From positions 1 to 64,000 of the IMG/VR virus record IMGVR_UViG_3300036715_003906: a stretch of 64,000 nucleotides of DNA. The stretch is one strand, 5' to 3'. Below, piece after piece: positions 956 through 47,159 of this stretch. The number at the start of each line of letters is the position of its first letter. The first letter of the stretch is position 1. The notes under the pieces are model-generated. The model was not told the origin of the DNA and did not search any database. It worked only from the letters and a program-made list of their open reading frames with translations. Made by a program: the position numbers and the translations under genes.

Positions 956-988
956 GGAGCTACTACGCGGCCCCTCCCCGAGAATCAA
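956..988 (-). promoter_or_regulatory. class I promoter cassette (P1)
   Basis: TTGATT-17nt-TAGTAG-ctcc-ATG on the minus strand. Confidence 0.8.
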
Positions 989-1017
989 AAGCCGCCCGTC
1001 GATTTCTTTTCGGCCCG

Positions 1018-1215
1018 CTATTTCAGCGGGCACCCGACGCGCTCGGCGGCCTTCACGGCCTCGTCGAAGCTCCCGTACCTCGTCCGTCGCCCCCCGCCCC
1101 GGGAGAGGTAGTCGTTGCCCCCCAGGTCATGGAAGAGGGGGTAGCGGTGGGACCCCATTCCCCCCTCGTGGCACTTGCCGCCGCACTCGCACGACTCGAA
1201 CCGAAGGCGTCTCCT
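1018..1215 (-). CDS. small Cys/His-rich hypothetical protein; start codon reads AGG
   Basis: GGTGTA at 1226-1231, then 10 nt, then in-frame AGG; CECGGKCH motif. Confidence 0.45.
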   Translation of the reverse strand, partial: RRRLRFESCECGGKCHEGGMGSHRYPLFHDLGGNDYLSRGGGRRTRYGSFDEAVKAAERVGCPLK

Positions 1216-1232
1216 ACCCCCGCCGTACACCG

Positions 1233-1547
1233 TCACGGGGCGATGGCGGGGGGTAACGGAGCCACCCCGATGAGCCTCCCGTAGACGTGTTTTTCAAGAG
1301 TCCAGCCGTTACAGTGGCCGTGGTTATTTGAAATCTGCAAGAGCTTGCCCTTCCGGGCCGTGCCGAGGTGGAGGAACTTCCGCCCCCGTACCTTGCAGAA
1401 CACGATGTCCCCGACGTCCGCGTCCGCCCCGAGGACGGGGGCCCCCGGGACGAGCTGGCCCGAGTAGACCCGGGGGGTCATCGAGTTTCCGTGGGGACAA
1501 AAAGAGACGGTTTCGCCGGCTTTCAGGCGGTCGTTCTGGTTTTGCAT
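1233..1547 (-). CDS. S24/S26 peptidase-like protein
   Basis: HGNSMTP (catalytic Ser), GDIVFCKV, FLHL, GHCNGW pattern of small S24-like proteins. Confidence 0.65.
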   Translation of the reverse strand: MQNQNDRLKAGETVSFCPHGNSMTPRVYSGQLVPGAPVLGADADVGDIVFCKVRGRKFLHLGTARKGKLLQISNNHGHCNGWTLEKHVYGRLIGVAPLPPAIAP

Positions 1548-1591
1548 GAGACCCGGACGATCGACCTTTGGAAAAATCGACAGGGCCGCTT

Positions 1592-1624
1592 TTGATTCCG
1601 AGGGGGGCGCTGCGTAGTACCCCC
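1592..1624 (+). promoter_or_regulatory. class I promoter cassette (P2)
   Basis: TTGATT-17nt-TAGTAC-cccc-ATG; upstream AAATCGAC shared with P1. Confidence 0.85.
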
Positions 1625-1822
1625 ATGACCACGACGACCGCCACCCCGCCCCGGACCCGCCCCCTCTGCCCCTGCTGCTCGCAGCGGATGACGTCCGACG
1701 AGGACACCGTGCTCCTCTCGGGCGTCGGCTACCACTCCGACTGCGTGGCCGAGGTGAACGCGGACCTCGACGCCCGGGACGCCGACCTCGACCTCGACCC
1801 GGACTACCTGGCGGCCGTCTGA
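1625..1822 (+). CDS. small Zn-binding hypothetical protein
   Basis: Leaderless start after P2; CPCC...HxxC motif, acidic tail. Confidence 0.6.
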   Translation: MTTTTATPPRTRPLCPCCSQRMTSDEDTVLLSGVGYHSDCVAEVNADLDARDADLDLDPDYLAAV

Positions 1823-1836
1823 GTCCCTCGGCGCCC

Positions 1837-2241
1837 ATGCGGGGCGTCGAATCCCAACCGTTGGGCTTCCCGGTGGAGGCAACGGCCGAGCAGTTCCGGG
1901 CCCTCGCCCGGGTCCAGGTCAGCAAGGACGACCTCCGTAAGTTCGTCCGCTCGGTCTTCCGCCCCAAGGTCATCGAGGGTGGCCCCCTCGACCCGACGGA
2001 GGAAGCGGAGAACGACTGCGATAGGCTGCTCGGGAAGATCATCCCGCTCTTCGAGGGCGGTCGGGGGAACGACCTCCCCGGGGTCGCCGGCACGGCGTGG
2101 GGCGCCTACAATAGCTTGAACGAATATCTCGCTTACGAACGCGGGAATAATGACGCAACCCGGCTGGATTCCATGTGGTTTGGGGACTCGGCCCGCCTCA
2201 ATGAGCGCGCCCTGAAGGTCGCCCTGGCGATGGTCGGCTGA
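1837..2241 (+). pseudogene. C-terminal fragment of a DUF932 (LGT_TIGR03299-like) phage protein
   Basis: GTAWGAYNSLNEYL...RLDSMWFG..ARLNERAL matches the DUF932 C-terminus; N-terminal part absent. Confidence 0.65.
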
Positions 2242-2305
2242 ACAACTCCCCTGCGAAGGGGGTAGCCGCGACGAGAAGGACCCCACGGTACACCCCGTCG
2301 ACCTC

Positions 2306-2919
2306 GTGCGCTTCATGATGAGCACGGGCCTCTTTGACGAGGAGACCGAAGGGGGCCCGGGCCTCGTCGGAGCCTTCACCGAAGGGGACCCCGCGTGGCG
2401 GGTCCTCCTCGGCACGGGCGAGAACGCCTCGGGCAAGAGCCCGGTCCGCCGGCTCATCAGCGCCATCTGCCAGCGGCAGAAGAAGGTCGAGCACATCGTG
2501 ACCAGCCTGGAGGCCAAGACCCATCACAGCGACGCCCCCTGGCTCGCCATGGTCTACGGCTCCGAAGCGTGGTCGGCGACGGGACAGAACTCGGCCCACC
2601 TCATCCTCGGCGGGATCCGTACAGCCAGGGGGCGGGAGACGCCCCACGTCCTCACCTGGGACGAGCCCGAGCTGGGGCTGAGTGAAGGCGCCCAGCTTGC
2701 CGCCGGAGAGGCTTTTGCTGACCTTGGGCGGGCCCCAGGAGCGCACACGAGGGTGATGGCCCTGGTCACCCACAGCCGACACATCGGAAGGGCTCTCCTG
2801 CCCCTCCGGCCACCCTGGAGGACTGGCTCCAGGCCCCGCTCGTCCCCCGCCCCCTGGAGGACCTCGAGAGCGCCGGCCACGCGCGCTTCCGCCGGGTCTC
2901 GGCGATCCTGAAAGAGTGA
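2306..2919 (+). CDS. ABC/AAA-type ATPase, frameshifted near the 3' end
   Basis: Walker A GENASGKS, Walker B LTWDEPELGLS, H-loop LVTHS; natural-looking stop at 2917-2919 in another frame. Confidence 0.65.
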
Positions 2920-2928
2920 CGGGGGCTT

Positions 2929-2961
2929 TTGCTTCTCGCCCTCCACGCGCGTAGTACCGCC
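2929..2961 (+). promoter_or_regulatory. class I promoter cassette (P3)
   Basis: TTGCTT-17nt-TAGTAC-cgcc-AGG. Confidence 0.7.
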
Positions 2962-3276
2962 AGGGCCACGCAAACCGACCCCAAGGGCATCCCTCACGAC
3001 TACGACGCGGAGTACTTCAAGACCGCGAAGCGACCCACCGAAGCCCTCCAGGTGAAGGTGGGGGACATCGTGGAGTGGACCAAATACTTCCTCAAGAGCA
3101 CGGGCCACGGGCCCACCCATCCCGCCTGGCGTCTCCAGGGTCGGGTCGAGAGCCTCTGCGACGAGGGCGCTTTCAAGGGCTGGCCCCGGGTCCTCTGGGC
3201 CGGCCGCGACGAGGCGAACCTCGTCTGCCCCGTCACCCTCTGTTTCCCCGGCGCGAACCTGCGCCGCCTGGAGTAA
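2962..3276 (+). CDS. hypothetical protein (start reads AGG)
   Basis: ORF in frame from the cassette start position; KVGDIV SH3-like segment. Confidence 0.6.
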   Translation, partial: RATQTDPKGIPHDYDAEYFKTAKRPTEALQVKVGDIVEWTKYFLKSTGHGPTHPAWRLQGRVESLCDEGAFKGWPRVLWAGRDEANLVCPVTLCFPGANLRRLE

Positions 3277-3531: not shown

Positions 3532-3564
3532 TTGATTCCCGACCAGCTCCCGCGTAGTAGCCAC
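3532..3564 (+). promoter_or_regulatory. class I promoter cassette (P4)
   Basis: TTGATT-17nt-TAGTAG-ccac-AGG. Confidence 0.8.
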
Positions 3565-3837
3565 AGGACCCCCCTGAACGCCTCCCTCGGGCAGCAGCAC
3601 GCGATGGACTTCCTCACCGGCCCGTTGCCGTTGCCCCCCATCTCCGAGGATACCTGCACCCTCACCTTTTGGGCGAGTCACGCCATCGGGGCGTGCCGGG
3701 CAGACCTGACCCTGGAGTCTCCCGGGGAGGATTGTAAATTCTGCCTGATGGCCTACCTTTCGGCCTACCAGGCCACCTGCGCGACTTTCTACCAGATGTC
3801 CTGGCAGATGTTTGATTCCGGACGTCCCCCCGCGTAG
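3565..3837 (+). CDS. hypothetical protein (start reads AGG)
   Basis: In frame from P4; its stop TAG is the -10 box of P5. Confidence 0.45.
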   Translation, partial: RTPLNASLGQQHAMDFLTGPLPLPPISEDTCTLTFWASHAIGACRADLTLESPGEDCKFCLMAYLSAYQATCATFYQMSWQMFDSGRPPA

Positions 3838-3844
3838 TACCCCC
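3812..3844 (+). promoter_or_regulatory. class I promoter cassette (P5)
   Basis: TTGATT-17nt-TAGTAC-cccc-ATG. Confidence 0.85.
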
Positions 3845-4135
3845 ATGCGCCTGACCCGCTACCAGATTCCCAAAGCCCCGTTCTACATCCTCGGCTGGGC
3901 CGCGGACCCCAGCGCGGTCTACCGCACGAGCCGCTACATCGTCCCCGCGGCTTCGGCCGCGGAGGCAGAGAAGCTCAAGGGGGAGGTCGAGGCGGCCCTC
4001 GGGACCCACAAGGGCTCGGTCATTGTCTCGATCGAGACCGAGAAGCCCGAACTGCGCAAGGGCGTCTGGTACGCCCTGGGGATGCCCCCCGTCTTCCGCT
4101 TAGCGGTCTCGCATGGTGTACGGGAGGCCCCATGA
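3845..4135 (+). CDS. hypothetical protein
   Basis: Leaderless ATG after P5; ATGA overlap with the next gene. Confidence 0.7.
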   Translation: MRLTRYQIPKAPFYILGWAADPSAVYRTSRYIVPAASAAEAEKLKGEVEAALGTHKGSVIVSIETEKPELRKGVWYALGMPPVFRLAVSHGVREAP

Positions 4136-5479: not shown

Positions 5480-5491
5480 CCGGGGGGGGGC

Positions 5492-9313: not shown

Positions 9314-9346
9314 TTTATTCTCGGGGGGCCCCCGCGTAGTAGCTCC
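9314..9346 (+). promoter_or_regulatory. class I promoter cassette (P6)
   Basis: TTTATT-17nt-TAGTAG-ctcc-ATG. Confidence 0.75.
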
Positions 9347-9745
9347 ATGACCACCCTGACCCTCCGCCCCGCCAAGCTCGCCGACCTCGACAACGTCATC
9401 CCAGGCTTGGCCAACGTCTGGAAGCAGATCAAGGCCCAGTGCGGCACGAAGAAGCGCGTCCCCACCATCACCCTCGCCGACTACGCCGAGGCGATGTGCC
9501 CGAACGACGACTCCCTGTGCCGGCGCTTCGCCCTCGACCTCACGACGATGAATCTGAGCGCCGGGCTCCGCGTCTCGGCCGGGGAGTGGGCGGTCCATGC
9601 CAGCCCCAACCACGACGAAGGCGTCGAGGGCGTCGGCAACGGGCAGGCCCTCCTTGACTGCGAGTGGAACGATTTTCACGGCTTCTTCACCCTGCGCATC
9701 CAGGTGGCCCCCGGGGCCCTCCCGAAGCAGGTCACCCAGGGCTGA
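9347..9745 (+). CDS. hypothetical protein
   Basis: Leaderless ATG after P6; strong codon bias. Confidence 0.75.
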   Translation: MTTLTLRPAKLADLDNVIPGLANVWKQIKAQCGTKKRVPTITLADYAEAMCPNDDSLCRRFALDLTTMNLSAGLRVSAGEWAVHASPNHDEGVEGVGNGQALLDCEWNDFHGFFTLRIQVAPGALPKQVTQG

Positions 9746-12751: not shown

Positions 12752-12784
12752 TGGATTCCCGGGGGGCCCCCGCGTAGTAGCGGC
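12752..12784 (+). promoter_or_regulatory. class I promoter cassette (P7)
   Basis: TGGATT-17nt-TAGTAG-cggc-ATG. Confidence 0.75.
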
Positions 12785-13057
12785 ATGTTCAAACGAACCG
12801 ACCGGGTCACCTCCAGCGGCTGCCTCCTCACTGTCCTCGACGTCTCCGTCGGGGCCCTCACCAGGGCCTTCGGGGCCCCTTGCCGGGGGCATGAGGACGA
12901 TGAGGCGGGGTACAGCGGGGAGGAGTGGTACTTCGAGGGGACGGGGGGCCAGAAGGGCCACTTCCACGTCTACGTCCGGTGCGGGCAGCCTCGGATCGGG
13001 GGCAACGAGAACCAGAACCTCCCGCTCTTCAAGGCGTGGCTACGGAGCCGTCTCTGA
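12785..13057 (+). CDS. hypothetical protein
   Basis: Leaderless ATG after P7; single plus-strand gene inside a minus-strand block. Confidence 0.7.
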   Translation: MFKRTDRVTSSGCLLTVLDVSVGALTRAFGAPCRGHEDDEAGYSGEEWYFEGTGGQKGHFHVYVRCGQPRIGGNENQNLPLFKAWLRSRL

Positions 13058-16556: not shown

Positions 16557-16870
16557 GGACTCACCCTGGGGAGCAGCTCCTCGGGGTGGAATCCCTCCAG
16601 AAACCGCACGATGCGGTCCCGGCTCTTCTCCGGCAGGGAGTCCGCCACCTCGGTCATGGCCTTCTCGGTCGCCTGTCGCAGAACGGCCATGAGGTCGTCC
16701 CGACTCTGGCTCTGCCGTGCCTGGTTCCACTGATCTTCCAGCCTCCCCGTCAACCCCTGCTCGATGGTGAGGAGGCCCTTGCCCACGTCGTCTTCGCGTC
16801 CTGCCATGACGGCTGCGCGGACCTTGCTCTTCATCAGGCGGTAGGCCGCCTCGTAGATTGTCTGTTTCAT
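16553..16870 (-). CDS. hypothetical protein
   Basis: Leaderless ATG after P8. Confidence 0.65.
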   Translation of the reverse strand: MKQTIYEAAYRLMKSKVRAAVMAGREDDVGKGLLTIEQGLTGRLEDQWNQARQSQSRDDLMAVLRQATEKAMTEVADSLPEKSRDRIVRFLEGFHPEELLPRVSP

Positions 16871-16904
16871 GGGGGATACTACACCTGACATGCCTTGAAA
16901 TCAA
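16871..16904 (-). promoter_or_regulatory. hybrid class I/II promoter (P8)
   Basis: TTGATT-17nt(ending GGTG)-TAGTAT-ccccc-ATG; canonical TAnnnT. Confidence 0.8.
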
Positions 16905-19085: not shown

Positions 19086-20425
19086 GGCAGGAGGGGCAGA
19101 CCCTTCGTGGTGTTCCGCTTCTTCGGAGCCAGGGTACGGTCCGCAGCGTAGCAGTTGTGGGTCGCGAGGCCCGCCGCCATGAAGGTCCGGGTGCTCGTGC
19201 GGATGTCGATGACCTCCCGCTCCCCTGCCCGCTCGATAGACACGATGCGGTCGTGGGCGAAGTCGATGCTCCTCCCAAAGAAGCCGAGCTTGTAGTCGTC
19301 GAGGAAGTCAGGCCCCAGGGCCACGTCAAAGCGGTGCAGGACCGAGGACACGCTCAGGCGATCCGCCCGCTTCCATTGCTTGCGGGTCCGGCCCTCCAGC
19401 CACAGGTGGTCCTCGGTCGTGTAGAACTCGGTCGACTCCGTCACGACGCGCAGGACGGGCTTGTGGAACGTCCAGACACCTTCCACTTTGCTGCTACGGA
19501 ACTTGCGGATCTTCCGCGGGCCTTCCGGTTCCTCATCGAACCCGATGAGCCGGTCCCCCGGCCGCACGGTGGCCAGGGGCCGCCAGGAGAAGTCCTCGAA
19601 CAGCACCGGCGTCGCCGGATCAAGGCAGTACGTACAGCCGAGCGTGCAGGATTCGTTGATCGTGAAGGGGTCCACCATGAGGACGCACCCGCAGCCCTCG
19701 GAGGGGGGAGCCTCATGCCCGGGCAGCCCGAAGGCCCGGGCCGGCGCGCACACCCCTGGCCGCAGGTTCGAGGGCAGCCCGTCCACCCGGTAGAGGGTGC
19801 GGTCCTCGTTGCAGAGCAGGACCCTCATCCCGTGGACCTGGGCCCGAGCCGCAAGCTCCCCCATGAGGGCGAGGCGCGCTTCCCGGTCCCGCGTCTCGAC
19901 CATGAGGTCGTTGCTCTGGAGGAAGGACAGGTACACGTCCCTGATCCGGGACCCCCTGATCTTGTCGAGAATCCGCACGAAACGCCCGATCACTTCCTCG
20001 TGGGGAAGCAGGGGCACGGGGGAAAATCGCCAGTGGGTCCGGGGAAAGGTGCAGGAGGTGCCGACCAGCATGTCACACGCTTCGTCGAGGTCAGGGGCTC
20101 CTTTCTCGACCTCCTCCCACCCCGTCACCGTGACGTGGACCTCGACCTTGTCGTACTCCCGCAGAAGCCGGTGATCCCGGAGCAGGTTCCGCGGGTCCTT
20201 CGTCCAGAAGGTGAGCCCCAGGGTGTCCTCGGGGCTCAGGGACCAATGGGCCGGAACCCCGCTCCGGGGGTCGATCCCGGCGAAGCTCCCCTCGGCCAGC
20301 CTGTCCCGAAACCAGGACCACTTCGCCGCCGGGACGTCGGTCCAGCGGGAAAAGGAGTAGGGGAGGTTCTCCTCGACGCCCGTCTTGAGGGCGCGGGGGG
20401 CGGAATGGATCAGTGGTTCGCTCAT
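19082..20425 (-). CDS. DUF1848-family (radical-SAM-like Fe-S) protein interrupted by an intein
   Basis: SFSRWTDVPA, FWTKDP, WRFSPV, CGC....D......C..GC.YC.A after splicing. Confidence 0.8.
   Translation of the reverse strand: MSEPLIHSAPRALKTGVEENLPYSFSRWTDVPAAKWSWFRDRLAEGSFAGIDPRSGVPAHWSLSPEDTLGLTFWTKDPRNLLRDHRLLREYDKVEVHVTVTGWEEVEKGAPDLDEACDMLVGTSCTFPRTHWRFSPVPLLPHEEVIGRFVRILDKIRGSRIRDVYLSFLQSNDLMVETRDREARLALMGELAARAQVHGMRVLLCNEDRTLYRVDGLPSNLRPGVCAPARAFGLPGHEAPPSEGCGCVLMVDPFTINESCTLGCTYCLDPATPVLFEDFSWRPLATVRPGDRLIGFDEEPEGPRKIRKFRSSKVEGVWTFHKPVLRVVTESTEFYTTEDHLWLEGRTRKQWKRADRLSVSSVLHRFDVALGPDFLDDYKLGFFGRSIDFAHDRIVSIERAGEREVIDIRTSTRTFMAAGLATHNCYAADRTLAPKKRNTTKGLPLLP
19154..19627 (-). mobile_element. 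158-aa mini-intein (no endonuclease domain)
   Basis: Block A CLDPATPV, block B TTEDHLW, block F VIDIRTSTRTF, block G THN followed by Cys+1. Confidence 0.9.
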
Positions 20426-24712: not shown

Positions 24713-24724
24713 GTTTCCCTCTCT

Positions 24725-28085: not shown

Positions 28086-28285
28086 GCCACCTCGCGCGGC
28101 CGGTAGGCCCCGCACGAGGGGCAGTCCGCCCCCCCGTAGACGTGGCCCTCGCCGCAGCGGGAGCAGCGCTGGGCAGCGAGCCACTCGGACCTCTCCCTCT
28201 GCGTCCGCCGCTTGTTCTTGTACACGGTCCGCTTGGGCCGCTTGCGCCCCCCCGTTGGCCTTGCGCATGCCCCCCGGCTACACCG

Positions 28286-28477: not shown

Positions 28478-28803
28478 GCGGGCTCCGGGGCGGGGCTGGG
28501 GACCACCACGAAGTGCAGGAGCTTCCCGTCGTCGTCGTACTCCCCCGCGATGCGGTAGCCGGGGGACAGGATGCCGAGGAGCCCGTTGACGACGCCCAGC
28601 GTGCCGAGGAGCGGGCCCCGCGGCCCCTCCATGAGCACCACGGTCGGGTGGTCGAGGAGCGCCGACCCTTCCTCCACCCCCACCCGGTTCTCGACCATCT
28701 TCTCGATCGCCTCGGGCTCCGCCTCCCGGATCTCTTCGAGCAGTCGCCAGGCCGCGTACACGGCCCCCATCTCGGGGGCCGGCGTCACGTAGATGTGTTT
28801 CAT
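28474..28803 (-). CDS. hypothetical protein
   Basis: GGTGTA-10nt-ATG; L..HPTV...G.LGV.NG motif of a phage family. Confidence 0.6.
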   Translation of the reverse strand: MKHIYVTPAPEMGAVYAAWRLLEEIREAEPEAIEKMVENRVGVEEGSALLDHPTVVLMEGPRGPLLGTLGVVNGLLGILSPGYRIAGEYDDDGKLLHFVVVPSPAPEPA

Positions 28804-29499
28804 CCCCCCGCCCTACACCGCTTCGATCTCGGCCACATCGTCGATCCGCACCCGGGGCCCCGTAGGAAGGGCCGCCTCCCCCGGAGGCTGGACCGCAAGA
28901 TCGATCCGTCCTCGTCGAGCGGCGGGGGGTGGAAGGGGCCGAGCGGTCGCCCTTTTGCGACGGAGGCCCCGCTGCGGCCCGGGAGCACCTCCTGGAGCGA
29001 CTCCGCCCCTGGGCCCGGATGCTCGCCCTCCGGTTCGGGGCCCCGGTCTATCTCGTCGGCTCGGCTCTTGAGCTTGTCGACCCCCGGGACGTAGACGTCC
29101 GTGTCCTCGTCCGCGAGGAGGACTTCAAGGCTAGGTACGGCGATCCGGAAGAGTGGCGCCGGGCCCAGGGGTGGCCCGGCCCTCCTCCTTGACATGATCC
29201 ATGAGCCGCGAGACCAGGCGGAAGGCGGTGACGTGGATGTCTTCGATCGGCTTCGGGGTGAGCGTCATCCCCCAGGGCTACACCGCGAAGTCCGCTCCCT
29301 TCGGCGTCTTCCCGGACGTTCTGGAGGACGCCCCCGACGAGGTCCGCGTAGAGCACGGGCCCGAACCAGGCCACGTCGTTGAGCGGCATCCGCCGGCCCT
29401 CCCAGGGCACGATGTGGAGGTAGCCCCCGAGGGCCCGCAGCCGCACCACGGCCTCCTCGACGTGCAGGCCGTTCAGGCCGGCCAGGAACTCGGGGGGCA

Positions 29500-30666: not shown

Positions 30667-31323
30667 TCAGAAACAGCCGCGGCCCTTGCGCTTCTCGGCC
30701 TTCGCCAGCGGGAGGAGCTTCTCCTCGGCGAACGCCTTGAGGGCGGGGAGGTCGGCCAGCTCGGGCTGGTGGTTCTCGATGTACAGGAGATCCCCCAGGC
30801 GCCGCTGGACCTCCGCTCGCATGGCCTCCCGGTCGCCCCCGAACACGGGGGCAAGGATCGTGCCCGAGGGCATGGGGCAGTAGGCGTCGGGGTTTAGGGG
30901 CCGCGGCAGCACAGGGGCGAGGACGTCGTTCAGGTAGGCCGCCGTCATCCACACGGGGGCGCGGTTGACCTCGGGGGGCCGTTCCTCGAGGAGCGCCGTG
31001 AGGTAGACGCCGAGCATCTCCAGCGCGTAGTCGAGGGACCCGATCCAGTACGCCCGGGGCCGCTCCCGGGGCGTGAAGACCTCCTCGGACGTCCACCGGG
31101 GTCGGGGGTAGCCGTCGGGCCAGGGGATGACCTCCAGGAACTCCGTCTTGCGGCGGACGAAGGGCACGGCGTCCGCGTCGTCCTTGTCATCCTCCTTGAC
31201 GTAGACGACCATCCTCTCGTCGTTCGCGTCGTTCGCGTCGTTCGTCGTGTTGATCGCCTCCCCCCGGACCCAGTATTTGGGCCCCCGGTAGTGGCGGTAA
31301 AGACCCGGCTTGATTCCCGTCAT
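30667..31323 (-). CDS. DUF1653-domain protein
   Basis: GLYRHYRG.Y.V..A....E.MVVY...FVR...FLE; GGTGTA-11nt-ATG. Confidence 0.7.
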   Translation of the reverse strand: MTGIKPGLYRHYRGPKYWVRGEAINTTNDANDANDERMVVYVKEDDKDDADAVPFVRRKTEFLEVIPWPDGYPRPRWTSEEVFTPRERPRAYWIGSLDYALEMLGVYLTALLEERPPEVNRAPVWMTAAYLNDVLAPVLPRPLNPDAYCPMPSGTILAPVFGGDREAMRAEVQRRLGDLLYIENHQPELADLPALKAFAEEKLLPLAKAEKRKGRGCF

Positions 31324-31495
31324 GGGGAGCCGGATACACCGGCCGTTTCTCGGCGCGCTTCTCCTTGGTCTCCGCGGCCGAGAGGCACCGTCGGACCACC
31401 TCGGAGAACGAGACCCCGAGCTTCTCCGCTTGCTTCTCCGCCCAGGCCACATTCGGCCCGGAGAGCGCCACGGAGACCTTCTTCACTTTCTTCAT
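31187..31495 (-). CDS. ribbon-helix-helix (CopG-like) DNA-binding protein
   Basis: KVSVALS...W.EKQAEKLGVSFSEVVRRCL. Confidence 0.6.
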   Translation of the reverse strand: MKKVKKVSVALSGPNVAWAEKQAEKLGVSFSEVVRRCLSAAETKEKRAEKRPVYPAPHDGNQAGSLPPLPGAQILGPGGGDQHDERRERRERREDGRLRQGG

Positions 31496-32046
31496 AGCCC
31501 CTCGAGGTGCGTCATGACCTCGGCCCACGATCGGGTCCGATGCCCCACCCGGGCCGAGTCGTTGTACGGCTGGTGCCAGAGCAGGGGCAGGCCCTTCAGG
31601 TGATGCTCGGCCCACGACGCGATGTTATCGGGGTTGTCGTCGATGAGCACGTCGCCCGCCACCAGGAACTTCGCCGAGGTGTGGACGATCCGGCTCCGGG
31701 GGATGCCGAAGTGCTCGTGCAGCCACTCATCCCGCTCATTGGCCCAGTGGGCCGTGGGCATCGGGGCCGTCACGATGTAGGGGTCGGCCCGGAAGGCGAG
31801 GGCGCGGTAGCCCTCCTTGGCCCCCGCGTAGATCGGGATGTTCCGACACCACCCCTTCTCGCCACACGCCCGGATAAAGGCCGGTTCATGGGCCTTGTCG
31901 AACCGGTCGAACATAGGCCACTCGGTCTGGTCCTCGGGCCGGTGGTTCGTCCGGCCGAGGTAGTTCAGGAGGGCGTAGGCCGGGGTCAGAAAATCAGCGA
32001 GGACCCCATCGACGTCGAGCAGCACCCGGGGCTTTCGGTTTCTCAT
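31492..32046 (-). CDS. 5'(3')-deoxyribonucleotidase (HAD, NT5C family)
   Basis: LDVDGVLADF, IVTAP, WL.EHF, K..V.GDVLIDD, PYN. Confidence 0.88.
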   Translation of the reverse strand: MRNRKPRVLLDVDGVLADFLTPAYALLNYLGRTNHRPEDQTEWPMFDRFDKAHEPAFIRACGEKGWCRNIPIYAGAKEGYRALAFRADPYIVTAPMPTAHWANERDEWLHEHFGIPRSRIVHTSAKFLVAGDVLIDDNPDNIASWAEHHLKGLPLLWHQPYNDSARVGHRTRSWAEVMTHLEGL

Positions 32047-32054
32047 GACCCTCT

Positions 32055-32270
32055 TTACACCGGGAAGAAGCCCTCCAGCACGTCGAAGGCCGCGAGTTCC
32101 TCGGCCGTGGCCTTCCGTACCTTCCCGGCGTCGACCATCCCCGCCACCATCTCATCCACCTGCGCGATCGACAGGCAGGAGCCGAGGTGCATCGTCAGCG
32201 GCCCGAGGAGCGTGGGCCGCGGGGCCCGACTCCTCATGTACTCCGCGATCTCCGCCCGAACGTCCTTCAT
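32055..32270 (-). CDS. small hypothetical protein
   Basis: ATGA coupling; ends PV* within a GGTGTAA element. Confidence 0.5.
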   Translation of the reverse strand: MKDVRAEIAEYMRSRAPRPTLLGPLTMHLGSCLSIAQVDEMVAGMVDAGKVRKATAEELAAFDVLEGFFPV

Positions 32271-34201: not shown

Positions 34202-35780
34202 TGCCCCCGCCGTGAACCTGCAAGGCACCTTCCCGATCCGGGTCACTCGCAAACCGGGCCCGAATCCCGTCGCCCGCCTCGGGATCGTAACCGACCCAGT
34301 CGACGATCTCCTTGATCTCGTCGGCCATGGTCTTGAGGAGGCGGGGCTTGCTCGCCAGGGCCGCCCCGAGGATGTCCTCGTCGAGCCCGTCCTTCTTCTC
34401 GACGAAGGACTTGACCATGGCGTCCCGGATGGCCTGCTCGATCTCGCGACCGACCAGCCCCCGGCCCTTGCTCGACAGCTCCGCCAGGTTGAAGGTCGCG
34501 ACCTTCTGGCGCCGCTTCGCCAGGTGGATCTTGAGGATGTCGACCCGGTCGCTCTCCGACGGGATGTCGAAGAAGAAGCGTTCGTCCATGCGGTTGACGA
34601 ACTCCACCGGGAGGCCCTTGAGGCTGTTCGCCGTCATGGCCAGGCAGACCTTCGCCTGGGTCTCCTGGAGCCAGGTCGACAGGATGCCGATCATACGGCT
34701 GGTGGTGCCCGCGTCCGACTGGCCCGAGGAGGCGTTGCCGGACAGGGACTTCTCGGCCTCGTCCATCCAGACGATGCAGGGGGCGATGGCTTCGATGACG
34801 CGGATCGCCCGGTAGACGGCCGCCTCCGACTCCCCGACGCCCGAGGACCGGAGCCGACCCATTTCGAGCTGGACGACCGGCAGGCCCCACGCGGACCCCA
34901 TCGCCTTGACGCTGAGGCTCTTACCGCAGCCCCAGACGCCCACGCACAGCACTCCCTTGGGGGGCGTCAGGCCGAACTTGGCCCCCGCGTCGGACCACGT
35001 CGCCTGCGTCTCCTTCACCCACGCCTTGAACCGCCCGGCCCCGCCCACCTGGTCGAAGGAGAAGGCGCTCACGTCCACGTTCGACACGAGGTCGGTCTTG
35101 GCGATCTGGGCCTGCCGGAAGTCACGGATGATCTTCGGGTCGATGCGCTTGCCGCCCCCTGCCTCGTCCTTCTTGGTCGCCACCACCGACGCCCGGATGG
35201 CCTGGTCGATCTCGTAGGACGTCATTCCGCGGAACAGGTCCGCGATGCCCGTCGGGGTCTTCGTGAGCCGCAGGTTCGTCGCCGTGGTCTCGACCACGCC
35301 CATGGTCTCCTCGGGGGAGAGGCCCTTGTCGTGGATGACCTGGATGTACCGGGAGAGCTTCTCCGGGATGACCTTCCGGGCCCCGACGAAGATGATGACC
35401 TTGACCCGCCGGGCGTCGTTGTGGAGCTGGTGGGCGATGTTCATGAACCGCCGCACGACGTGGGGGTCGTTCAGCCAGCGTTCCGGATCGGTCACGACGT
35501 AGAAGTGCTGCTTGTCCCCCGTCGCTTCCTTGTAGATCTTGTCGAGGGTGTCGTGGATCGACACGGTCCCGGAATCCACCGGCGCCGCCCCCTGCTTCCA
35601 CTCCCCGATGTACGCGGGCAAGGGCAGGAGGCCGAGCGTCGCGTTGTACACGGACACCCGATCGGCGTGCTCGCTCAAGGCCGCCCGGAGGTCGATGAGG
35701 AACTTGTCCTCCTCGTCCGTGACGAAGTACAAAAACGAGGCCAGGTGCTTCAGGCGGAAGAACATCTCTTCGTTGATCAT
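34194..35780 (-). CDS. Ycf46-like AAA+ ATPase
   Basis: Inactive N-terminal AAA-like domain (T.EE), then PKGVLCVGVWGCGKSL, VGESE, WMDEAEK, TWLQE, TAN...LP.E..R.DE.FF; GGTGTA-9nt-ATG. Confidence 0.85.
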   Translation of the reverse strand: MINEEMFFRLKHLASFLYFVTDEEDKFLIDLRAALSEHADRVSVYNATLGLLPLPAYIGEWKQGAAPVDSGTVSIHDTLDKIYKEATGDKQHFYVVTDPERWLNDPHVVRRFMNIAHQLHNDARRVKVIIFVGARKVIPEKLSRYIQVIHDKGLSPEETMGVVETTATNLRLTKTPTGIADLFRGMTSYEIDQAIRASVVATKKDEAGGGKRIDPKIIRDFRQAQIAKTDLVSNVDVSAFSFDQVGGAGRFKAWVKETQATWSDAGAKFGLTPPKGVLCVGVWGCGKSLSVKAMGSAWGLPVVQLEMGRLRSSGVGESEAAVYRAIRVIEAIAPCIVWMDEAEKSLSGNASSGQSDAGTTSRMIGILSTWLQETQAKVCLAMTANSLKGLPVEFVNRMDERFFFDIPSESDRVDILKIHLAKRRQKVATFNLAELSSKGRGLVGREIEQAIRDAMVKSFVEKKDGLDEDILGAALASKPRLLKTMADEIKEIVDWVGYDPEAGDGIRARFASDPDREGALQVHGGGNG

Positions 35781-35823
35781 GACGGTCCTTACACCACCCG
35801 GGGAACGGGCAGTGGAGCTAACG

Positions 35824-37117: not shown

Positions 37118-37145
37118 GGTAACCGCCACCGCCCCCCCGCGCTAC

Positions 37146-43737: not shown

Positions 43738-45475
43738 GTTTCTTGGCCCCCTCTTGCATCTTCCGCACGAGGTCCTTGGTCGAGCTGCCCTTGGTGTCGA
43801 AGGTGAGGGCCCCCACGGCCGACTCCCCGAGTACCTGGTCGATGATCGCCTTCTTCCCTTCGAGGGTTTCGAGCACGTAGTCGTCGATCGTCTTGCGCTC
43901 CTTGGCCGTCTCCCCCGGTAGCTCGCTCACCAGGTGGTAGACGAGGATACGCGTGTGCTTCGACCCGAGCCGCTGGGGCCGGCCGAGCGTCTGGACGTAG
44001 TTCCCCCACGACCAGGGGGCGTCGAAGAACAGGAGGGCCGAGGCGGCTTGCAGGTTGATCGCCTCCGACCCCGCGTCGGTGATGAAGATCACCTTCGTCG
44101 GGCTGTTCTCGTCCTGGAAGGCGTCCTGAGCCGCCTTGCGTTGCTGGACCTTCTCCTTGCCCGTGATGCGGACCGAGGTGATCCCGCCCGCCGTCAGGAT
44201 GGCCTGGAGCCGGCCCACCAGCGACTCGAACCGCGTGTAGACAACGACCTTCTCGCCGTCGAGTTCCTCGGTCAAGATGTCCATCAGGAGCCGCTCCTTC
44301 GACCCGAGCTTGTCGACCTTGATCGCCTCCTCCGCAAAGGCCGAGCTGACCTCGTCCGCCTCCTTGTACTTGAGCAGCGTGAGGGAGTTGACGACGAGCT
44401 GGCAGTAGATGAGCGCCGTGAGCGCCTTGGTCTCCTCGTAGTCCTTGACCGTCCCGTCCCCGAGTTCGAGGACCCCCGACACCGCCTCCCGGTACTTCGC
44501 CACCTCCGCCGGCAGGAGCGTCGTCGTCATCCGCCGCGTCGTGAGCACCGGTAGCTCGTCCGACACCACGGTCTTCGGGCGGCCGAGGAAATAAGGGTCG
44601 ATCATCTGCCGGAAAAGGCTGAGGTTCCGGTAGCCCACGACCAGGGGGATGCGCCGGCCCCCGGGCATCACCTGCTCACGCACCACGCAGAAGGAGTCGT
44701 GAAATGCCTTCTTGGTCGCGAAGAGCCAGGGCACGACCGCCTTGTAGATCGAGAAACCCTCCACCAGATTGTTCTTCAGGAGCGTCGCCGTCAGGCCGTA
44801 GCAGCGGTTCGATCGGGCCGAGAGCGCCTGGACCACCGTCCACGTCTTCGTCGCCGTGTTCTTGAACGCCGTGGCCTCGTCGAAGATGGTCAGGACGCTG
44901 GTCATCTCCCGCGTGATCCCGTCGAGGAGCCCGGGGATGAAGATCGGCTTCTCGCCCCGCTTCGTGGCCTTGATCATCCCGCTGCCCGCGGTCCAGTCCC
45001 GCAGGAGCTGGCTGTACGTCATCAGCAGGAGCGGCTTGTCCGGCCCCGCGTAGGCTTTCCAGGCGTGGTAGATGGTCTTCCGCTCGTCCGGACCGCCCCC
45101 GACCACGAACACCTTGACCCCCTTCGTAAACCGCAGGATCTCGCTCTCCCACTGGAGCTGCGGGGCCACGGGCGAGACCACGATGGGCCGCGTCCCGGGC
45201 TCCCGCTGCCAGAGGTAGCAAAGGGCCGCCACGGCCTGGAGGGTCTTGCCCAGGCCCGTCCCGTCGCCGAGGATCATCCGAGGCATCCGCATCAGGTGGT
45301 AGACCCCGATCGTCTGATAGTACCTGAGCCGGAGCGGGACCGGCCCCGTCGGCGTGTCCAGCGTGTCCCGCAAATGAGGGGTGGGTTTCAGGGCCACCGT
45401 TTTCGAGTCCCGGATGCGTAGGAGGTCGTGGTAGGTGGCGGTGATCTCGGCTTGGGCCGCGGCCGGAAGGGGCAT
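43730..45475 (-). CDS. SNF2-family (SF2) helicase
   Basis: LGDGTGLGKT, IFDEA, LTATLLKN, KVVVYT, AGSEAINLQAA, QTLGRPQRLG; GGTG-TAAAGT-7nt-ATG. Confidence 0.9.
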   Translation of the reverse strand: MPLPAAAQAEITATYHDLLRIRDSKTVALKPTPHLRDTLDTPTGPVPLRLRYYQTIGVYHLMRMPRMILGDGTGLGKTLQAVAALCYLWQREPGTRPIVVSPVAPQLQWESEILRFTKGVKVFVVGGGPDERKTIYHAWKAYAGPDKPLLLMTYSQLLRDWTAGSGMIKATKRGEKPIFIPGLLDGITREMTSVLTIFDEATAFKNTATKTWTVVQALSARSNRCYGLTATLLKNNLVEGFSIYKAVVPWLFATKKAFHDSFCVVREQVMPGGRRIPLVVGYRNLSLFRQMIDPYFLGRPKTVVSDELPVLTTRRMTTTLLPAEVAKYREAVSGVLELGDGTVKDYEETKALTALIYCQLVVNSLTLLKYKEADEVSSAFAEEAIKVDKLGSKERLLMDILTEELDGEKVVVYTRFESLVGRLQAILTAGGITSVRITGKEKVQQRKAAQDAFQDENSPTKVIFITDAGSEAINLQAASALLFFDAPWSWGNYVQTLGRPQRLGSKHTRILVYHLVSELPGETAKERKTIDDYVLETLEGKKAIIDQVLGESAVGALTFDTKGSSTKDLVRKMQEGAKKHG

Positions 45476-45519
45476 GGCGGGCACTTTACACCGGACCGGA
45501 GGAATCGACCGGCCGCCTT

Positions 45520-45552
45520 TTGATTCTCGTCCGAGCCCCGCGTAGTACCCCC
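45520..45552 (+). promoter_or_regulatory. class I promoter cassette (P12), divergent from the SNF2 promoter
   Basis: AATCGAC upstream; TTGATT-17nt-TAGTAC-cccc-AGG. Confidence 0.8.
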
Positions 45553-45681
45553 AGGACCACGCTCCTCGTCACCCTGACGAGGCCCGAGCCCGACTACAGC
45601 GAGAGGGCCCGCGTCGAGGCCCCCCTCAGCTACGATCGGTTCAGGGCCATCGAGCAGGGTCGCGGGGACGGGAACTGCTGA
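45553..45681 (+). CDS. 42-aa ORF (start reads AGG)
   Basis: In frame from P12 to TGA at 45679. Confidence 0.35.
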   Translation, partial: RTTLLVTLTRPEPDYSERARVEAPLSYDRFRAIEQGRGDGNC

Positions 45682-45722
45682 CCTGTCAGGAGGGGGGCCC
45701 ATCCCCCCTCTAGGAGACCATC

Positions 45723-46346
45723 ATGACCAACCCACAGTTTGCCCACGCCCTCGCCCTCGCGGGGCGTCACTCCCATTTCTGGCCCGGCGTCGTCGCCGAA
45801 GGAGAGGAGCCCTCCTGGGCCGAGATCCACACCCGGTGCAAGGCCGCCTTCAAGGAGGCTTACCAGGAGCACGGCAACGGCCCCTGGTGCGGGGGCATCA
45901 CGCCCGAGGTCAGCGAGGACGGGACCCTGCGCCACACGACGATGACGGGCCGGCTAAGCTGGGTCATCCTGCCCGACGGGCACGTCACCCTCACCGTCGA
46001 CCGCAAGGACGTCGGTGTGGTCCTGATCTGCGAGGTCTACCACAGCCGCGGGCGGGGCTGGGTCGCCACCACCTTGACGGCCCCCGGGCTCCTCCGCCGT
46101 CACTTCTGGGCCTGGAAGCTCGCCCTCCATGCCGTTGCAGGGGCGGGCATCCTACCCCCCGCCGAGGTCGAGCGCGCCATCGACATCACGCTCCCCGATG
46201 TCGAGGACCTTCTCGACGAGCTGATCGAGTGCCGCGCCACCCTGGCTGCGGTCCTCGACCCCGAGAAGACGCCCGACCTCGTGAACCGGGAGGAGTCGAC
46301 GGCCCAGCACCGGGCATGGATCAAGCGAGTCGAAAGGAGTCTCTGA
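45723..46346 (+). CDS. hypothetical protein
   Basis: AGGAG SD plus ATG. Confidence 0.7.
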   Translation: MTNPQFAHALALAGRHSHFWPGVVAEGEEPSWAEIHTRCKAAFKEAYQEHGNGPWCGGITPEVSEDGTLRHTTMTGRLSWVILPDGHVTLTVDRKDVGVVLICEVYHSRGRGWVATTLTAPGLLRRHFWAWKLALHAVAGAGILPPAEVERAIDITLPDVEDLLDELIECRATLAAVLDPEKTPDLVNREESTAQHRAWIKRVERSL

Positions 46347-46351
46347 GGGTT

Positions 46352-46384
46352 TTGCTTCCCGGGGGTCTGCCGCGTAGTACCCCC
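46352..46384 (+). promoter_or_regulatory. class I promoter cassette (P13)
   Basis: TTGCTT-17nt-TAGTAC-cccc-ATG. Confidence 0.8.
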
Positions 46385-46758
46385 ATGAAAACCCTGACAT
46401 CCGAGACGGCAACACCATCCACTCTGTCGAGGGCGAGGTGCTCCACGACGGCCGCATCCTCGTCACCTACCGGGGCCTCGACGCCTACACGGGAGAGGCA
46501 ACCCCCCTCTTTTTCGAGGCACACTTCAAGGGCAACGTCACCGCCCCCGTCGCCTTCTTCCGGGCCATGAGCCAGATGCAGGCAGACAACAAGCACCGCC
46601 TCGTCGAGATGTTCACGACGAGCGCGAAGTGGCACGTCCAGATGGGCGTCGGGCCCGACGGCCGCCCCTGCAACGAGAAGCCCGCCCCCCGGGCCAGCCG
46701 ACCCCTCGACATCCCGCGCGAGTCGAGGTGGTTCAACTTATCGGCGGGCGCTGTTTGA
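46385..46758 (+). CDS. hypothetical protein with a 1-nt frameshift near 46398
   Basis: MKTL(T) joins IRDGNTIHSVEGEVLHDG... if one base is restored; stop TGA lies within P14. Confidence 0.6.
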
Positions 46759-46787
46759 TTCCTGGGGGGTCTCTGCGTAGTACCCCC
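46755..46787 (+). promoter_or_regulatory. class I promoter cassette (P14)
   Basis: TTGATT-17nt-TAGTAC-cccc-ATG. Confidence 0.85.
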
Positions 46788-47105
46788 ATGTCCACCGACC
46801 GCCGCTTCATCACCCGCTTCTCCCTCCTCGCGTCGACCATGGAGGTGCTCGTCGATACCGACTACGAGGGCCGCCTCGTCTTCGAGGCGAGCCTCCGTGA
46901 CGAGGGACAGGAGAGCGCGTACTACGTCCTCAGGGCCACCCGGTCCGTCGTCAGCAAGAACACGGACCGGCTCGCCGACGCCGTGATCCGAGCCCTGCTC
47001 GGGACGACCTGCGTGGTCGACGTGGTCGAGCTGTTCAAGGGCTCGGACCTGTGGATGGTGAGCGAGCACGACCAGGAAGCCCTGAACTACTACGCGGGCA
47101 TCTGA
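46788..47105 (+). CDS. hypothetical protein
   Basis: Leaderless ATG after P14. Confidence 0.7.
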   Translation: MSTDRRFITRFSLLASTMEVLVDTDYEGRLVFEASLRDEGQESAYYVLRATRSVVSKNTDRLADAVIRALLGTTCVVDVVELFKGSDLWMVSEHDQEALNYYAGI

Positions 47106-47126
47106 AAGAATCGTACAGGGGGGCGT

Positions 47127-47159
47127 TTGATTCCTCGGGGGGTGCTGCGTAGTGCCCCC
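47127..47159 (+). promoter_or_regulatory. class I promoter cassette (P15)
   Basis: TTGATT-17nt-TAGTGC-cccc-ATG. Confidence 0.8.

What the first reader, a model, noticed from the sequence alone, without database searches (positions are those of the whole stretch)
956..47159. Fifteen copies of a fixed-geometry promoter cassette driving leaderless small genes
Seen directly: TTGATT-N17-TAGTA[C/G]-N4-start recurs, with GCG (or GTG) just before the TAG. Positions are 956(-), 1592, 2929, 3532, 3812, 9314, 12752, 16871(-), 20426(-), 23411(-), 25040(-), 45520, 46352, 46755 and 47127. The spacer is 17 nt in 14 of 15 copies. In the 12 non-hybrid copies the start codon is exactly 33 nt from the first T of the -35, with no room for a Shine-Dalgarno. 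P1, P2 and P12 share an upstream AATCGAC. Established: a TTGAnn box 17 nt from a TAnnnn box is sigma-70 geometry. Inference: these are early promoters producing leaderless mRNAs for an arsenal of uncharacterised small proteins. The -10 usually lacks the conserved final T and sits only 4 nt from ATG, which may indicate a dedicated sigma factor or activator.
Basis: partly seen in the sequence, partly recalled or inferred. Interest (0 to 1): 0.75.

Follow-up and report, generated by a model that had tools for sequence, protein, structure and literature searches.

The report
Phage promoters fused to start codons
A huge uncultivated phage carries dozens of near-identical 36-base promoter cassettes that end on the ATG of the gene they drive, so the mRNAs probably have no leader; the design recurs in related phages, but its -10 box fits no standard sigma factor.

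Summary
All 15 copies are in the window, and 14 fit the pattern within one mismatch where 0.02 are expected by chance. The 251-kb contig, about half of a huge phage genome, holds 27. The consensus is (AAATCGAC)-N11-cTTTTGATTCC-N12-GCGTAGTAS-N3-C-ATG(ACCACC).

An ATG sits 33 or 34 nt from the -35 box in 21 of 27 copies. Eighteen of these open a convincing ORF with no room for a Shine-Dalgarno. Three copies whose real start lies further downstream carry a purine-rich leader.

The same geometry occurs in other metagenomic phage lineages, including before orthologues of three window genes. In one lineage the -35 box differs (TTGAAAC). In another the -10 box differs (CATGGT).

So "promoter placed to make leaderless mRNA" is well supported by comparison but unproven, because no RNA data exist. 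"Early" is only inferred.

Three window copies carry AGG where ATG should be. For one of them, homologues place their Met exactly there.

A second motif, GGTGTA-N9-11-ATG, precedes the replication genes.

The phage encodes an ECF-like sigma in an operon headed by one cassette. Which sigma reads the cassettes is unresolved.

This is a new variant of known kinds.

The parts
953..988 (-). Class I cassette: TTGATT-N17-TAGTAG-N4-ATG. ATG at 955 opens a 96-aa ORF (665-955). AATCGAC lies upstream.
   Evidence: an orthologue on L077 sits behind the same kind of cassette
1592..1627 (+). Class I cassette. ATG at 1625 opens a 65-aa ORF (1625-1822). AATCGAC lies upstream.
   Evidence: orthologue on L077 behind a cassette
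2929..2964 (+). Class I cassette (TTGCTT) with AGG at 2962 in place of ATG. The 104-codon frame runs to 3276 with high GC3.
   Evidence: homologues P0002 and P0003 start with Met at the AGG position; the AGG is also present in a contig from a second sample
3532..3567 (+). Class I cassette with AGG at 3565. The next in-frame ATG is at 3604. No homologues were found.
3812..3847 (+). Class I cassette. ATG at 3845 opens a 96-aa ORF (3845-4135).
9314..9349 (+). Class I cassette (TTTATT). ATG at 9347 opens a 132-aa ORF.
12752..12787 (+). Class I cassette (TGGATT). ATG at 12785 opens a 90-aa ORF.
16868..16904 (-). Hybrid cassette: TTGATT-N17-(GG)TGTAGTAT-N5-ATG. ATG at 16870 opens a 105-aa ORF. A strong hairpin lies just upstream.
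20423..20461 (-). Hybrid cassette: TTGATT-N18-(GG)TGTAGTAG-N6-ATG. ATG at 20425 opens a 447-aa DUF1848 protein.
23412..23440 (-). Hybrid cassette (GTGTAGCAC) with a leader. The likely start at 23396 follows a purine-rich stretch.
25037..25072 (-). Class I cassette (GCGGAGTAC). ATG at 25039 opens a 104-aa ORF.
45520..45555 (+). Class I cassette with AGG at 45553. The 42-codon frame has no canonical start. It lies back to back with the class II site of the SNF2 helicase gene in a 77-bp divergent gap.
46352..46387 (+). Class I cassette (TTGCTT). The frame opened by ATG at 46385 has poor GC3. The probable gene is 46438-46758, with a leader.
46755..46790 (+). Class I cassette. ATG at 46788 opens a 105-aa ORF.
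47127..47162 (+). Class I cassette (TAGTGC). ATG at 47160 opens a 288-aa ORF.
4115..4134 (+). Class II site: GGTGTA-N11-ATG, in front of gene 4132-4635.
45473..45492 (-). Class II site: GGTGTA-N11-ATG, in front of the SNF2 helicase, the first gene of the replication block.
35778..35795 (-). Class II site: GGTGTA-N9-ATG, in front of an AAA ATPase.
32044..32061 (-). Class II site: GGTGTA-N9-ATG.
31321..31340 (-). Class II site: GGTGTA-N11-ATG.
28801..28819 (-). Class II site: GGTGTA-N10-ATG.
28266..28284 (-). Class II site: GGTGTA-N10-ATG.
27366..27384 (-). Class II site: GGTGTA-N10-ATG.
24710..24731 (-). Class II site: GGTGTA-N13-ATG, in front of the ClpX-like gene.

Best explanation
Each cassette is a bipartite, sigma-dependent promoter built so that RNA polymerase starts at the A of the ATG, 33 nt after the first T of the -35 box. 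The mRNA then has no leader and no Shine-Dalgarno, and ribosomes would start on its 5'-terminal AUG.

Parts of the cassette:
- an optional upstream AAATCGAC at about -51 to -44;
- a -35 box, TTGATTCC;
- a spacer of fixed length and free sequence;
- an invariant GCGTAGTA block;
- three free bases, then C(-1) A(+1) TG;
- a preferred ACCACC just after the ATG.

The cassettes drive mostly small genes of unknown function in the two arms of the contig, an operon holding an ECF-like sigma, and probably a tRNA array. That fits an early or delayed-early class.

Shown: the motif, its geometry, its conservation across lineages, and the absence of Shine-Dalgarno sequences.

Inferred: the start site, the timing, and the factor that reads the cassette. 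I lean slightly towards a non-housekeeping sigma, with the phage's own ECF-like protein as prime candidate (about 0.45). The host primary sigma is at about 0.3.
For: Motif and placement:
- 14 window hits against 0.02 expected; 27 genome-wide, all pointing into downstream frames.
- The information profile shows two conserved blocks separated by 12 weakly conserved, G-rich bases, as expected for DNA recognition by a sigma factor.
- ATG is at +33 or +34 in 21 of 27 copies. The chance frequency of ATG at one position is under 1%, my estimate from base composition.
- C at -1 is kept in 25 of 27 copies here and in all copies of the L077, L082 and G001 lineages, whereas the other discriminator bases vary.
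- The downstream proteins are not paralogues, yet they share ATGACCACC. The first codons therefore belong to the signal.

Internal contrast:
- Three copies lacking ATG at +33 have leaders with purine-rich stretches before their start.
- Late-block genes have AGGAG- or GGAG-type sites.

Conservation:
- The same 33-nt geometry is found in G001, L077, L082, L088/L089 and L085.
- On L077, orthologues of window genes 665-955, 1625-1822 and 2962-3276 each sit behind a cassette with ATG at +33.

No room for another promoter:
- In the 77-bp divergent gap at 45476-45552 there is no space for a second promoter.

Published support:
- Leaderless translation strongly prefers AUG.
- Translation falls about two-fold for each extra 5' nucleotide (bioRxiv 10.1101/2020.05.06.081141). 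This would explain the rigid spacing.
Against: - No transcript data exist. No RNA run holds this phage.
- With TAGTAS as the hexamer, the gap to the ATG is 4 nt. Leaderless genes elsewhere show 6-8 nt (PMC6028130), and the standard rule would put the start on the G of ATG.
- No register gives both A at -11 and T at -7.
- Three cassettes carry AGG at +1, which known leaderless translation should not use.
- Two or three ATG-bearing copies (46352, 109520, 212818) do not open a convincing ORF.
- Only about 53% of the genome is in hand, so a phage RNA polymerase cannot be excluded.
Confidence: 0.7

Rival explanations
1. These are ordinary early promoters read by the host's primary sigma factor. TTGATT is the -35 box, 17 bp follow, and TAGTAS is a weak -10 box. 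The phage's ECF-like sigma is an early product that later reads the GGTGTA class in front of the replication genes. This is a classical early-to-middle cascade.
For: - TTGA, then 17 bp, then TA is the sigma-70 layout. In the L077 lineage the -35 box is TTGAAA, 5 of 6 matches to TTGACA.
- The sigma-like gene lies second in an operon headed by cassette 219713(-).
- Class II sites lack any -35 box and sit before SNF2, AAA, ClpX and neighbouring replication genes.
- No RNA polymerase gene was found on the contig.
Against: - T at -7 is absent in 26 of 27 copies here and in every copy of three other lineages. This position is universally important for primary sigma factors (my background knowledge).
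- The simple sigma-70 scan finds none of the cassettes.
- The near-identity of eight -10 bases and of lineage-specific -35 boxes exceeds what a housekeeping sigma requires.
Confidence: 0.3
2. The cassettes are the regulon of the phage's own ECF-like sigma, which is either packaged in the virion or made at a basal level. CGT at -12 to -10 relative to the ATG is the -10 element. The lineage-specific box (TGATTC or TGAAAC) is the -35 element. The sigma operon is autoregulated, as ECF sigma genes usually are.
For: - The sigma-like ORF belongs to a family of about 100 clusters.
- The family profile matches the sigma-2 domain of SigH, SigE, SigL and SigR (E = 4e-5).
- The structural model has mean pLDDT 84.6. 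Residues 51-157 match SigW, sigmaE and SigH at Z 7-8.
- In three lineages one copy of that lineage's own promoter heads the operon holding the sigma homologue: G000, L088 and L085.
- The -10 sequence changes to CATGGT in L085, the lineage with the most divergent sigma of those examined (43% identity).
- CGT as -10 and GAAAC as -35 are ECF hallmarks (my background knowledge). ECF sigma factors need no T at -7.
Against: - The spacer between AAC (or its equivalent) and CGT is 14 nt, where ECF promoters typically have 16-17 (my background knowledge).
- G000's -35 box has no AAC.
- The C-terminal domain of the protein was not recognised as sigma region 4.
- The structural Z scores are moderate.
- The source of the first sigma molecules is unexplained.
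- Differences in host could equally explain the differences in promoter sequence.
Confidence: 0.45
3. The cassettes are read by a phage-encoded RNA polymerase encoded in the missing half of the genome, as with T7, N4 or phiKZ-type promoters. The resemblance to -35 and -10 boxes would be fortuitous.
For: - The copies are very uniform and the -10 box is non-canonical.
- The contig is only about 53% complete.
- Several giant ORFs have no recognisable domain.
Against: - The layout is bipartite with a spacer of free sequence and fixed length, unlike the contiguous promoters of single-subunit polymerases.
- No polymerase domain was found.
- TTGA plus 17 bp is kept across lineages.
Confidence: 0.08
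4. The motif acts at the RNA level. It would be a conserved 5' leader, transcribed from somewhere upstream, that binds a ribosome or a phage protein or forms a hairpin. It would not be a promoter.
For: - The G-rich spacer can pair with the C-run before the ATG in some copies.
- GGAGG occurs in a few spacers.
- Repeated start-associated sequences are known in Cluster K mycobacteriophages (PMC3203893).
Against: - Folding energies equal those of shuffled sequences (mean z = -0.03).
- The C-run is not kept in other lineages.
- Any GGAGG lies 17 nt from the ATG.
- The conserved blocks show no covariation, and there is no Rfam match.
- The 77-bp divergent gap at 45.5 kb leaves no room for an upstream promoter.
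Confidence: 0.05

Closest known systems
Sigma-70-type phage early promoter families (for example T4 early promoters and lambda PL/PR)
   Same: Many copies of a -35 box, a 17-bp spacer, a -10 box and an A-rich upstream element, placed before small genes in the genome arms.
   Different: The -10 box has no T at its last position in any register that keeps A at -11. The cassette ends on the start codon. The conserved bases are far from the TTGACA/TATAAT consensus that strong early promoters usually approach.
Leaderless genes of Actinobacteria, Deinococcus and Caulobacter, and lambda cI from PRM (GeneMarkS-2 'group C' pattern)
   Same: The promoter abuts the start codon, there is no Shine-Dalgarno, and AUG is strongly preferred.
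   Different: There the -10 box is a loose TANNNT 6-8 nt from the start and usually has no conserved -35 box (PMC6028130, PMC3898074). Here a 36-bp near-invariant cassette includes a -35 box and the first codons.
ECF (group 4) sigma promoters and phage-encoded ECF-like sigma factors
   Same: High-information bipartite promoters with CGT in the -10 box and GAAAC in the -35 box of one lineage. The sigma gene lies behind its own type of promoter. The sigma-2 domain of the phage protein matches ECF sigma factors.
   Different: The spacer is about 2 nt shorter. The -35 box of this phage lacks AAC. Region 4 was not recognised in the protein.
Start-associated sequences (SAS) of Cluster K mycobacteriophages
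   Same: A repeated motif at a fixed short distance upstream of many start codons in a high-GC phage.
   Different: By my recollection of PMC3203893 (listed, text not read), SAS is a 13-bp element that contains a Shine-Dalgarno-like core and lies in the leader. The cassette here has no Shine-Dalgarno and has promoter layout.

Membership tests
Sigma-70-type (-35/-10) promoter | -35 box resembling TTGACA | tested here: met
   TTGA is nearly invariant (T 27/27, T 26/27, G 26/27, A 25/27). The L077 lineage has TTGAAA.
Sigma-70-type (-35/-10) promoter | Spacer of 17 +/- 1 bp | tested here: met
   17 bp in 14 of 15 window copies and 18 bp in one. This holds only if TAGTAS is taken as the hexamer.
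Sigma-70-type (-35/-10) promoter | -10 hexamer with A at -11 and T at -7 (TANNNT) | tested here: not met
   The last base is C or G in 26 of 27 copies. The alternative register, CGTAGT, has T at -7 but G at -11. The simple sigma-70 scan finds none of the cassettes.
Sigma-70-type (-35/-10) promoter | Mapped transcription start 6-8 nt after the hexamer | not testable with these tools
   No RNA run holds the phage.
Leaderless mRNA gene | No Shine-Dalgarno between promoter and start codon | tested here: met
   Only 4 nt separate TAGTAS from the ATG.
Leaderless mRNA gene | AUG (or GUG) as the first codon of the transcript | tested here: inconclusive
   ATG is at +33 or +34 in 21 of 27 copies and AGG in 3. 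The transcript 5' end itself is unknown.
Leaderless mRNA gene | -10 box 6-8 nt from the start codon | tested here: inconclusive
   The gap is 4 nt for TAGTAS and 6 nt for CGTAGT. Class II sites (TA at -12/-11) and the L085 lineage (CATGGT-N6-ATG) fit the rule.
ECF sigma promoter | -10 box containing CGT | tested here: met
   In the window's phage, C 25/27, G 27/27 and T 26/27. Also kept in the copies listed for L077, L082 and L088.
ECF sigma promoter | -35 box containing AAC | tested here: not met
   The window's phage has TGATTC. AAC is present only in the L077/L088 lineage.
ECF sigma promoter | Cognate ECF sigma encoded and headed by its own promoter | tested here: inconclusive
   A sigma-2 domain is supported and a cassette heads the operon in three lineages. 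Binding and specificity are untested, and region 4 was not recognised.
Single-subunit phage RNA polymerase promoter (T7-like) | Contiguous conserved block of about 20 bp, and a polymerase gene | tested here: not met
   The layout is bipartite with a free spacer. PF00940 was not found, although the contig is only 53% complete and that search had no positive control.
Cluster K start-associated sequence | 13-bp motif with a Shine-Dalgarno core 3-8 bp before the start | tested here: not met
   There is no Shine-Dalgarno core, and the conserved blocks lie at -33 to -26 and -13 to -6.

The most novel reading that the evidence does not exclude
A clade of uncultivated huge phages specifies the transcription start and the translation start with a single 36-bp cassette. 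The cassette would be read by the phages' own ECF-like sigma, giving a phage-private, largely leaderless early transcriptome. The three cassettes with AGG at +1 would then report either non-AUG leaderless initiation or a deliberate translational off-switch.
Probability: 0.3. Interest if true: 0.75.

Novelty: new variant of a known kind. Interest (0 to 1): 0.55.

Why it matters
- If the start sites are confirmed, this is a compact, portable promoter-plus-start module for high-GC systems.
- It is a clear natural case where selection fixes the promoter-to-AUG distance to the nucleotide.
- It offers a test bed for how a -10 element lacking the canonical A(-11)/T(-7) pair is melted.
- It corrects annotation. 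Gene callers extend these ORFs to the in-frame TTG of the -35 box: the stored protein for 2929-3276 has 115 aa, against 104 and 98 aa in the homologues.
- It gives a sequence signature for recognising a clade of huge phages in metagenomes and for sorting their genes into expression classes.

Tried and rejected
- Hairpin between the G-rich spacer and the C-run: folding energies equal those of shuffles (mean z = -0.03), and the C-run is not kept in other lineages.
- Terminator fused upstream of every cassette: strong only at 4 copies (mean z = 0.08).
- Paralogous gene family as the reason for the shared ATGACCACC: no BLASTP hits among the 27 products.
- RNA evidence: no RNA run holds the phage. 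The single read-laying run on DNA contigs showed near-identical strains. A roughly 90% variant did not cover the cassettes.
- Relatives by exact motif: 21 of 23 viral-contig hits were chance matches, most of them in a conserved gene of low-GC phages. The metagenome scan gave 4 chance hits. Three of four genome-contig hits were a Bathyarchaeota coding sequence.
- LR745208, the nearest huge phage by SNF2 and PolA similarity, lacks the cassette.
- Sigma relatives in IMG/VR: none.
- Host identification failed:
  - PolA and ClpX similarities are uninformative;
  - the tmRNA tag ANDNVALVALAA was not matched to a phylum.
- Canonical TANNNT-N6-8-ATG class: no peak.
- My first Shine-Dalgarno census was too crude to use, because start calls were unreliable.
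- Rfam found nothing in the window.
- Literature searches for GGTGTA or similar phage promoters found nothing relevant.

Full report
**What the window is.** The window is the first 64 kb of a single 251,474-bp contig with 68% GC. It is an IMG/VR virus record classed as linear and about 53% complete. It has no close DNA match among deposited phages. Its SNF2 helicase and DNA polymerase are nearest to a 485-kb uncultured phage and to an Acidobacteria jumbo phage, at 31-38% identity. DNA runs holding it come from microbial-mat, sediment and freshwater metagenomes. No RNA run holds it. The host is unknown.

**The observation.** TTGATT-N17-TAGTAS occurs 14 times within one mismatch, where shuffles give 0.02. 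The 15th copy has an 18-nt spacer. The whole contig has 27 copies: 14 in the window, 1 at 109.5 kb and 12 between 212 and 246 kb.

The information profile shows two conserved blocks, cTTTTGATTCC and GCGTAGTA, separated by 12 weakly conserved, G-rich bases. The last 'hexamer' base is C or G. Next come three loosely C-rich bases, then C (25/27), A (23/27), T, G, and a preference for ACCACC. AATCG sits 16-18 nt before the -35 box in 11 copies.

Three of the twelve plain window copies (2929, 3532, 45520) have AGG, not ATG, at +33. Copy 46352 has an ATG that opens a frame with poor third-position GC.

**What follows the cassettes**:
- Sixteen copies have ATG at +33 opening a frame of 60-288 codons with GC3 of 0.89-1.0.
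- Two have ATG at +34 (16904, 219713).
- Three have ATG at +33 but a doubtful frame (46352, 109520, 212818).
- Three have AGG.
- Three have no start at +33, and their likely start further downstream follows a purine-rich stretch (23440, 234015, 246133).

The products are not paralogues and almost none has a known domain. The shared ATGACCACC therefore belongs to the signal, not to a protein family. Genes of the long minus-strand late block that have intergenic gaps show AGGAG- or GGAG-type sites 6-9 nt before their ATG. So Shine-Dalgarno-type sites are used elsewhere in this phage, and the cassette genes stand out by lacking any.

**Comparative evidence.**
- **G001** is a 60-kb viral contig. 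It shares almost no DNA with this phage except a 61-nt match at 85% over one cassette and one short stretch of 69-77% identity at about 162.5-163.2 kb. It has exact cassettes followed by ccccATG or ctccATG.
- **L077** is a 49.8-kb Logan contig with 66.6% GC. It was found through a homologue of the 2929 ORF. It has seven copies of (T/G/A)TGAAAS-N14-CGTAGTAS-N3-C-ATG in 12 kb. It carries orthologues (35-66% identity) of five window genes. Three of these (665-955, 1625-1822, 2962-3276) sit behind a cassette with ATG at +33 in both phages.
- **L082** is a 6.4-kb contig with 64% GC, binned in a 'Sulfurimonas' MAG. It has four copies with TTGATTCY (one TTGCTTCT) ... CGTAGTAG-agaC-ATG.
- **L088/L089** carry six or more TGAAAC-type copies.

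Across these lineages the 33-nt distance, CGTAGTAS and the C-A at -1/+1 stay fixed. TTGA is kept in most copies, though some L077/L088 copies begin GTGA or ATGA. The rest of the discriminator and the 3' half of the -35 box change. C at -1 with A at +1 is the preferred start-site dinucleotide of bacterial RNA polymerase (background knowledge).

Published reporter work shows that leaderless translation needs a 5'-terminal AUG and falls about two-fold per extra nucleotide. A rigid promoter-to-ATG distance is what that constraint predicts.

**The geometry problem.** If TAGTAS is the -10 hexamer, the spacer is the canonical 17 bp. But T at -7 is missing, and only 4 nt separate the hexamer from the ATG. 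Leaderless genes elsewhere show 6-8 nt. If CGTAGT is the hexamer, T at -7 and a 6-nt gap are restored. But the spacer is then 15 bp and -11 is G.

A more distant lineage, L085 (56% GC), has three copies of gtTTTGAnn-N15-CATGGT. Two of them continue N6-ATG-TCCACC, and the third has TGA at +33 and a leader. The total distance is again 33 nt, and the hexamer has both A at -11 and T at -7. This favours the second register and a start at the A. It rests on three copies only.

**A second motif.** GGTGTA-N9-11-ATG precedes about 22 genes in this contig and about 18 in G001, and it also occurs in L077 and L088. Of 110 GGTGTA occurrences, 22 lie 8-12 nt before a good ATG frame. The mean for other permutations of the same letters is 1.5.

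This motif has no -35 box and no T at -7. Its TA falls at -12/-11 if the A of the ATG is +1. In the window it precedes SNF2, an AAA ATPase, the ClpX-like gene and neighbouring genes of the replication block. The three 'hybrid' copies combine the -35 box with GGTGTAGTA and lie inside that block.

**Candidate reader.** No RNA polymerase domain was found (the T7-type search had no positive control). A 286-aa ORF at contig 217,944-218,804(-) has Sigma70_r2. It belongs to a family of about 100 clusters. The family profile hits the sigma-2 domain of ECF sigma factors (E = 4e-5). The structural model has pLDDT 84.6, and residues 51-157 match SigW, sigmaE and SigH at Z 7-8. Its C-terminal helical domain was not recognised as region 4.

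It is the second gene behind cassette 219713(-). Its homologues in L088 (54% identity) and L085 (43%) also lie in operons headed by that lineage's own promoter type. This fits either an early gene of a cascade or ECF-style autoregulation. I cannot separate the two.

**The AGG copies.** Homologues of the 2929 ORF (69% and 64% identity) begin with Met exactly where the window has AGG. The L077 orthologue has a normal cassette with ATG. So AGG is a derived loss of the start codon in a frame that is otherwise intact. A contig from a second sample shows the same AGG.

There is no in-frame canonical start for 30 codons after the AGG at 2929, and none at all in the 45520 frame. The in-frame TTG of the -35 box could serve only on read-through transcripts. 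Whether these genes are silent, decaying or translated unconventionally is open.

**Rejected alternatives.** An RNA hairpin, an upstream terminator as a general part of the cassette, known RNA families and a gene-family artefact were all rejected.

**Verdict.** This is a real, highly non-random promoter-like cassette fused to start codons. It is conserved in a clade of uncultivated high-GC phages and very probably makes leaderless mRNAs. The timing and the sigma factor are unresolved. It is a new variant of known kinds (phage promoter families, leaderless genes) and of moderate interest.

Noticed in passing
window 4115-4134, 24710-24731, 27366-27384, 28266-28284, 28801-28819, 31321-31340, 32044-32061, 35778-35795, 45473-45492: A second start-linked motif, GGTGTA-N9-13-ATG. 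It has no -35 box and sits in front of replication-block genes. It is also frequent in the related contigs G001, L077 and L088.
   Followed up: yes
window 2962-2964, 3565-3567, 45553-45555: AGG replaces the cassette's ATG in three copies. For the 2929 ORF, homologues place their Met exactly there. All three copies also lack the G-run in the spacer.
   Followed up: partly
window 2929, 3532, 3812, 45520, 46755, 47127 (TTG of the -35 box): The TTG of TTGATT is in frame with the ATG 33 nt downstream. Simple ORF calling, and apparently public gene calls (P0001, 115 aa), extend these genes by 11 spurious codons.
   Followed up: partly
contig 200,303-211,667 (L035/L036), outside the window: An array of about 32 tRNA genes plus a tmRNA (tag ANDNVALVALAA), all on the minus strand. 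Cassette 212818(-) points into it across two plus-strand genes.
   Followed up: partly
contig 217,944-219,679 (L001): An operon behind cassette 219713(-): a 283-aa ORF of unknown function followed by an ECF-like sigma-2 protein of 286 aa. A separate 230-aa protein with Sigma70_r4 near its N-terminus lies at 171,431-172,123.
   Followed up: partly
window 47301-47318: GGTGTA-N9-ATG lies inside the 288-aa gene 47160-48026 and in frame. It could give a 236-aa internal-start isoform.
   Followed up: no
window -51 to -44 of copies 988(-), 1592, 45520, 47127; also L077 and L088: An upstream AAATCGAC element occurs at a fixed distance in 11 of 27 copies. It is kept in the TGAAAC-type lineage. In this phage its reverse complement resembles the -35 box.
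   Followed up: partly
window 29500-30630: The thymidylate synthase gene is 376 aa long and its Pfam match is split into two stretches, which suggests an insertion.
   Followed up: no
window 49812-54062 and 54777-62288; contig 69,743-75,520 and 86,843-92,947: Giant ORFs of 1416, 2503, 1925 and 2034 aa have no Pfam match.
   Followed up: no
contig 151,328-154,093 and 158,569-161,943 (L033): Two large ORFs carry Hint, intein and LAGLIDADG signatures, suggesting intein-containing genes.
   Followed up: no
contig 109,400-109,487 (downstream of cassette 109520(-)): The frame after this cassette's ATG contains a direct repeat coding SSAAIRGFAHL twice and has poor GC3. Its status as a gene is doubtful.
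   Followed up: no
L082 (NZ_JALNZY010000099.1): A 6.4-kb contig with 64% GC and four cassettes is binned in a Sulfurimonas MAG. This is very probably a mis-binned phage fragment. It also has a direct upstream repeat of the -35 box (GGTTGATTCTCA).
   Followed up: no
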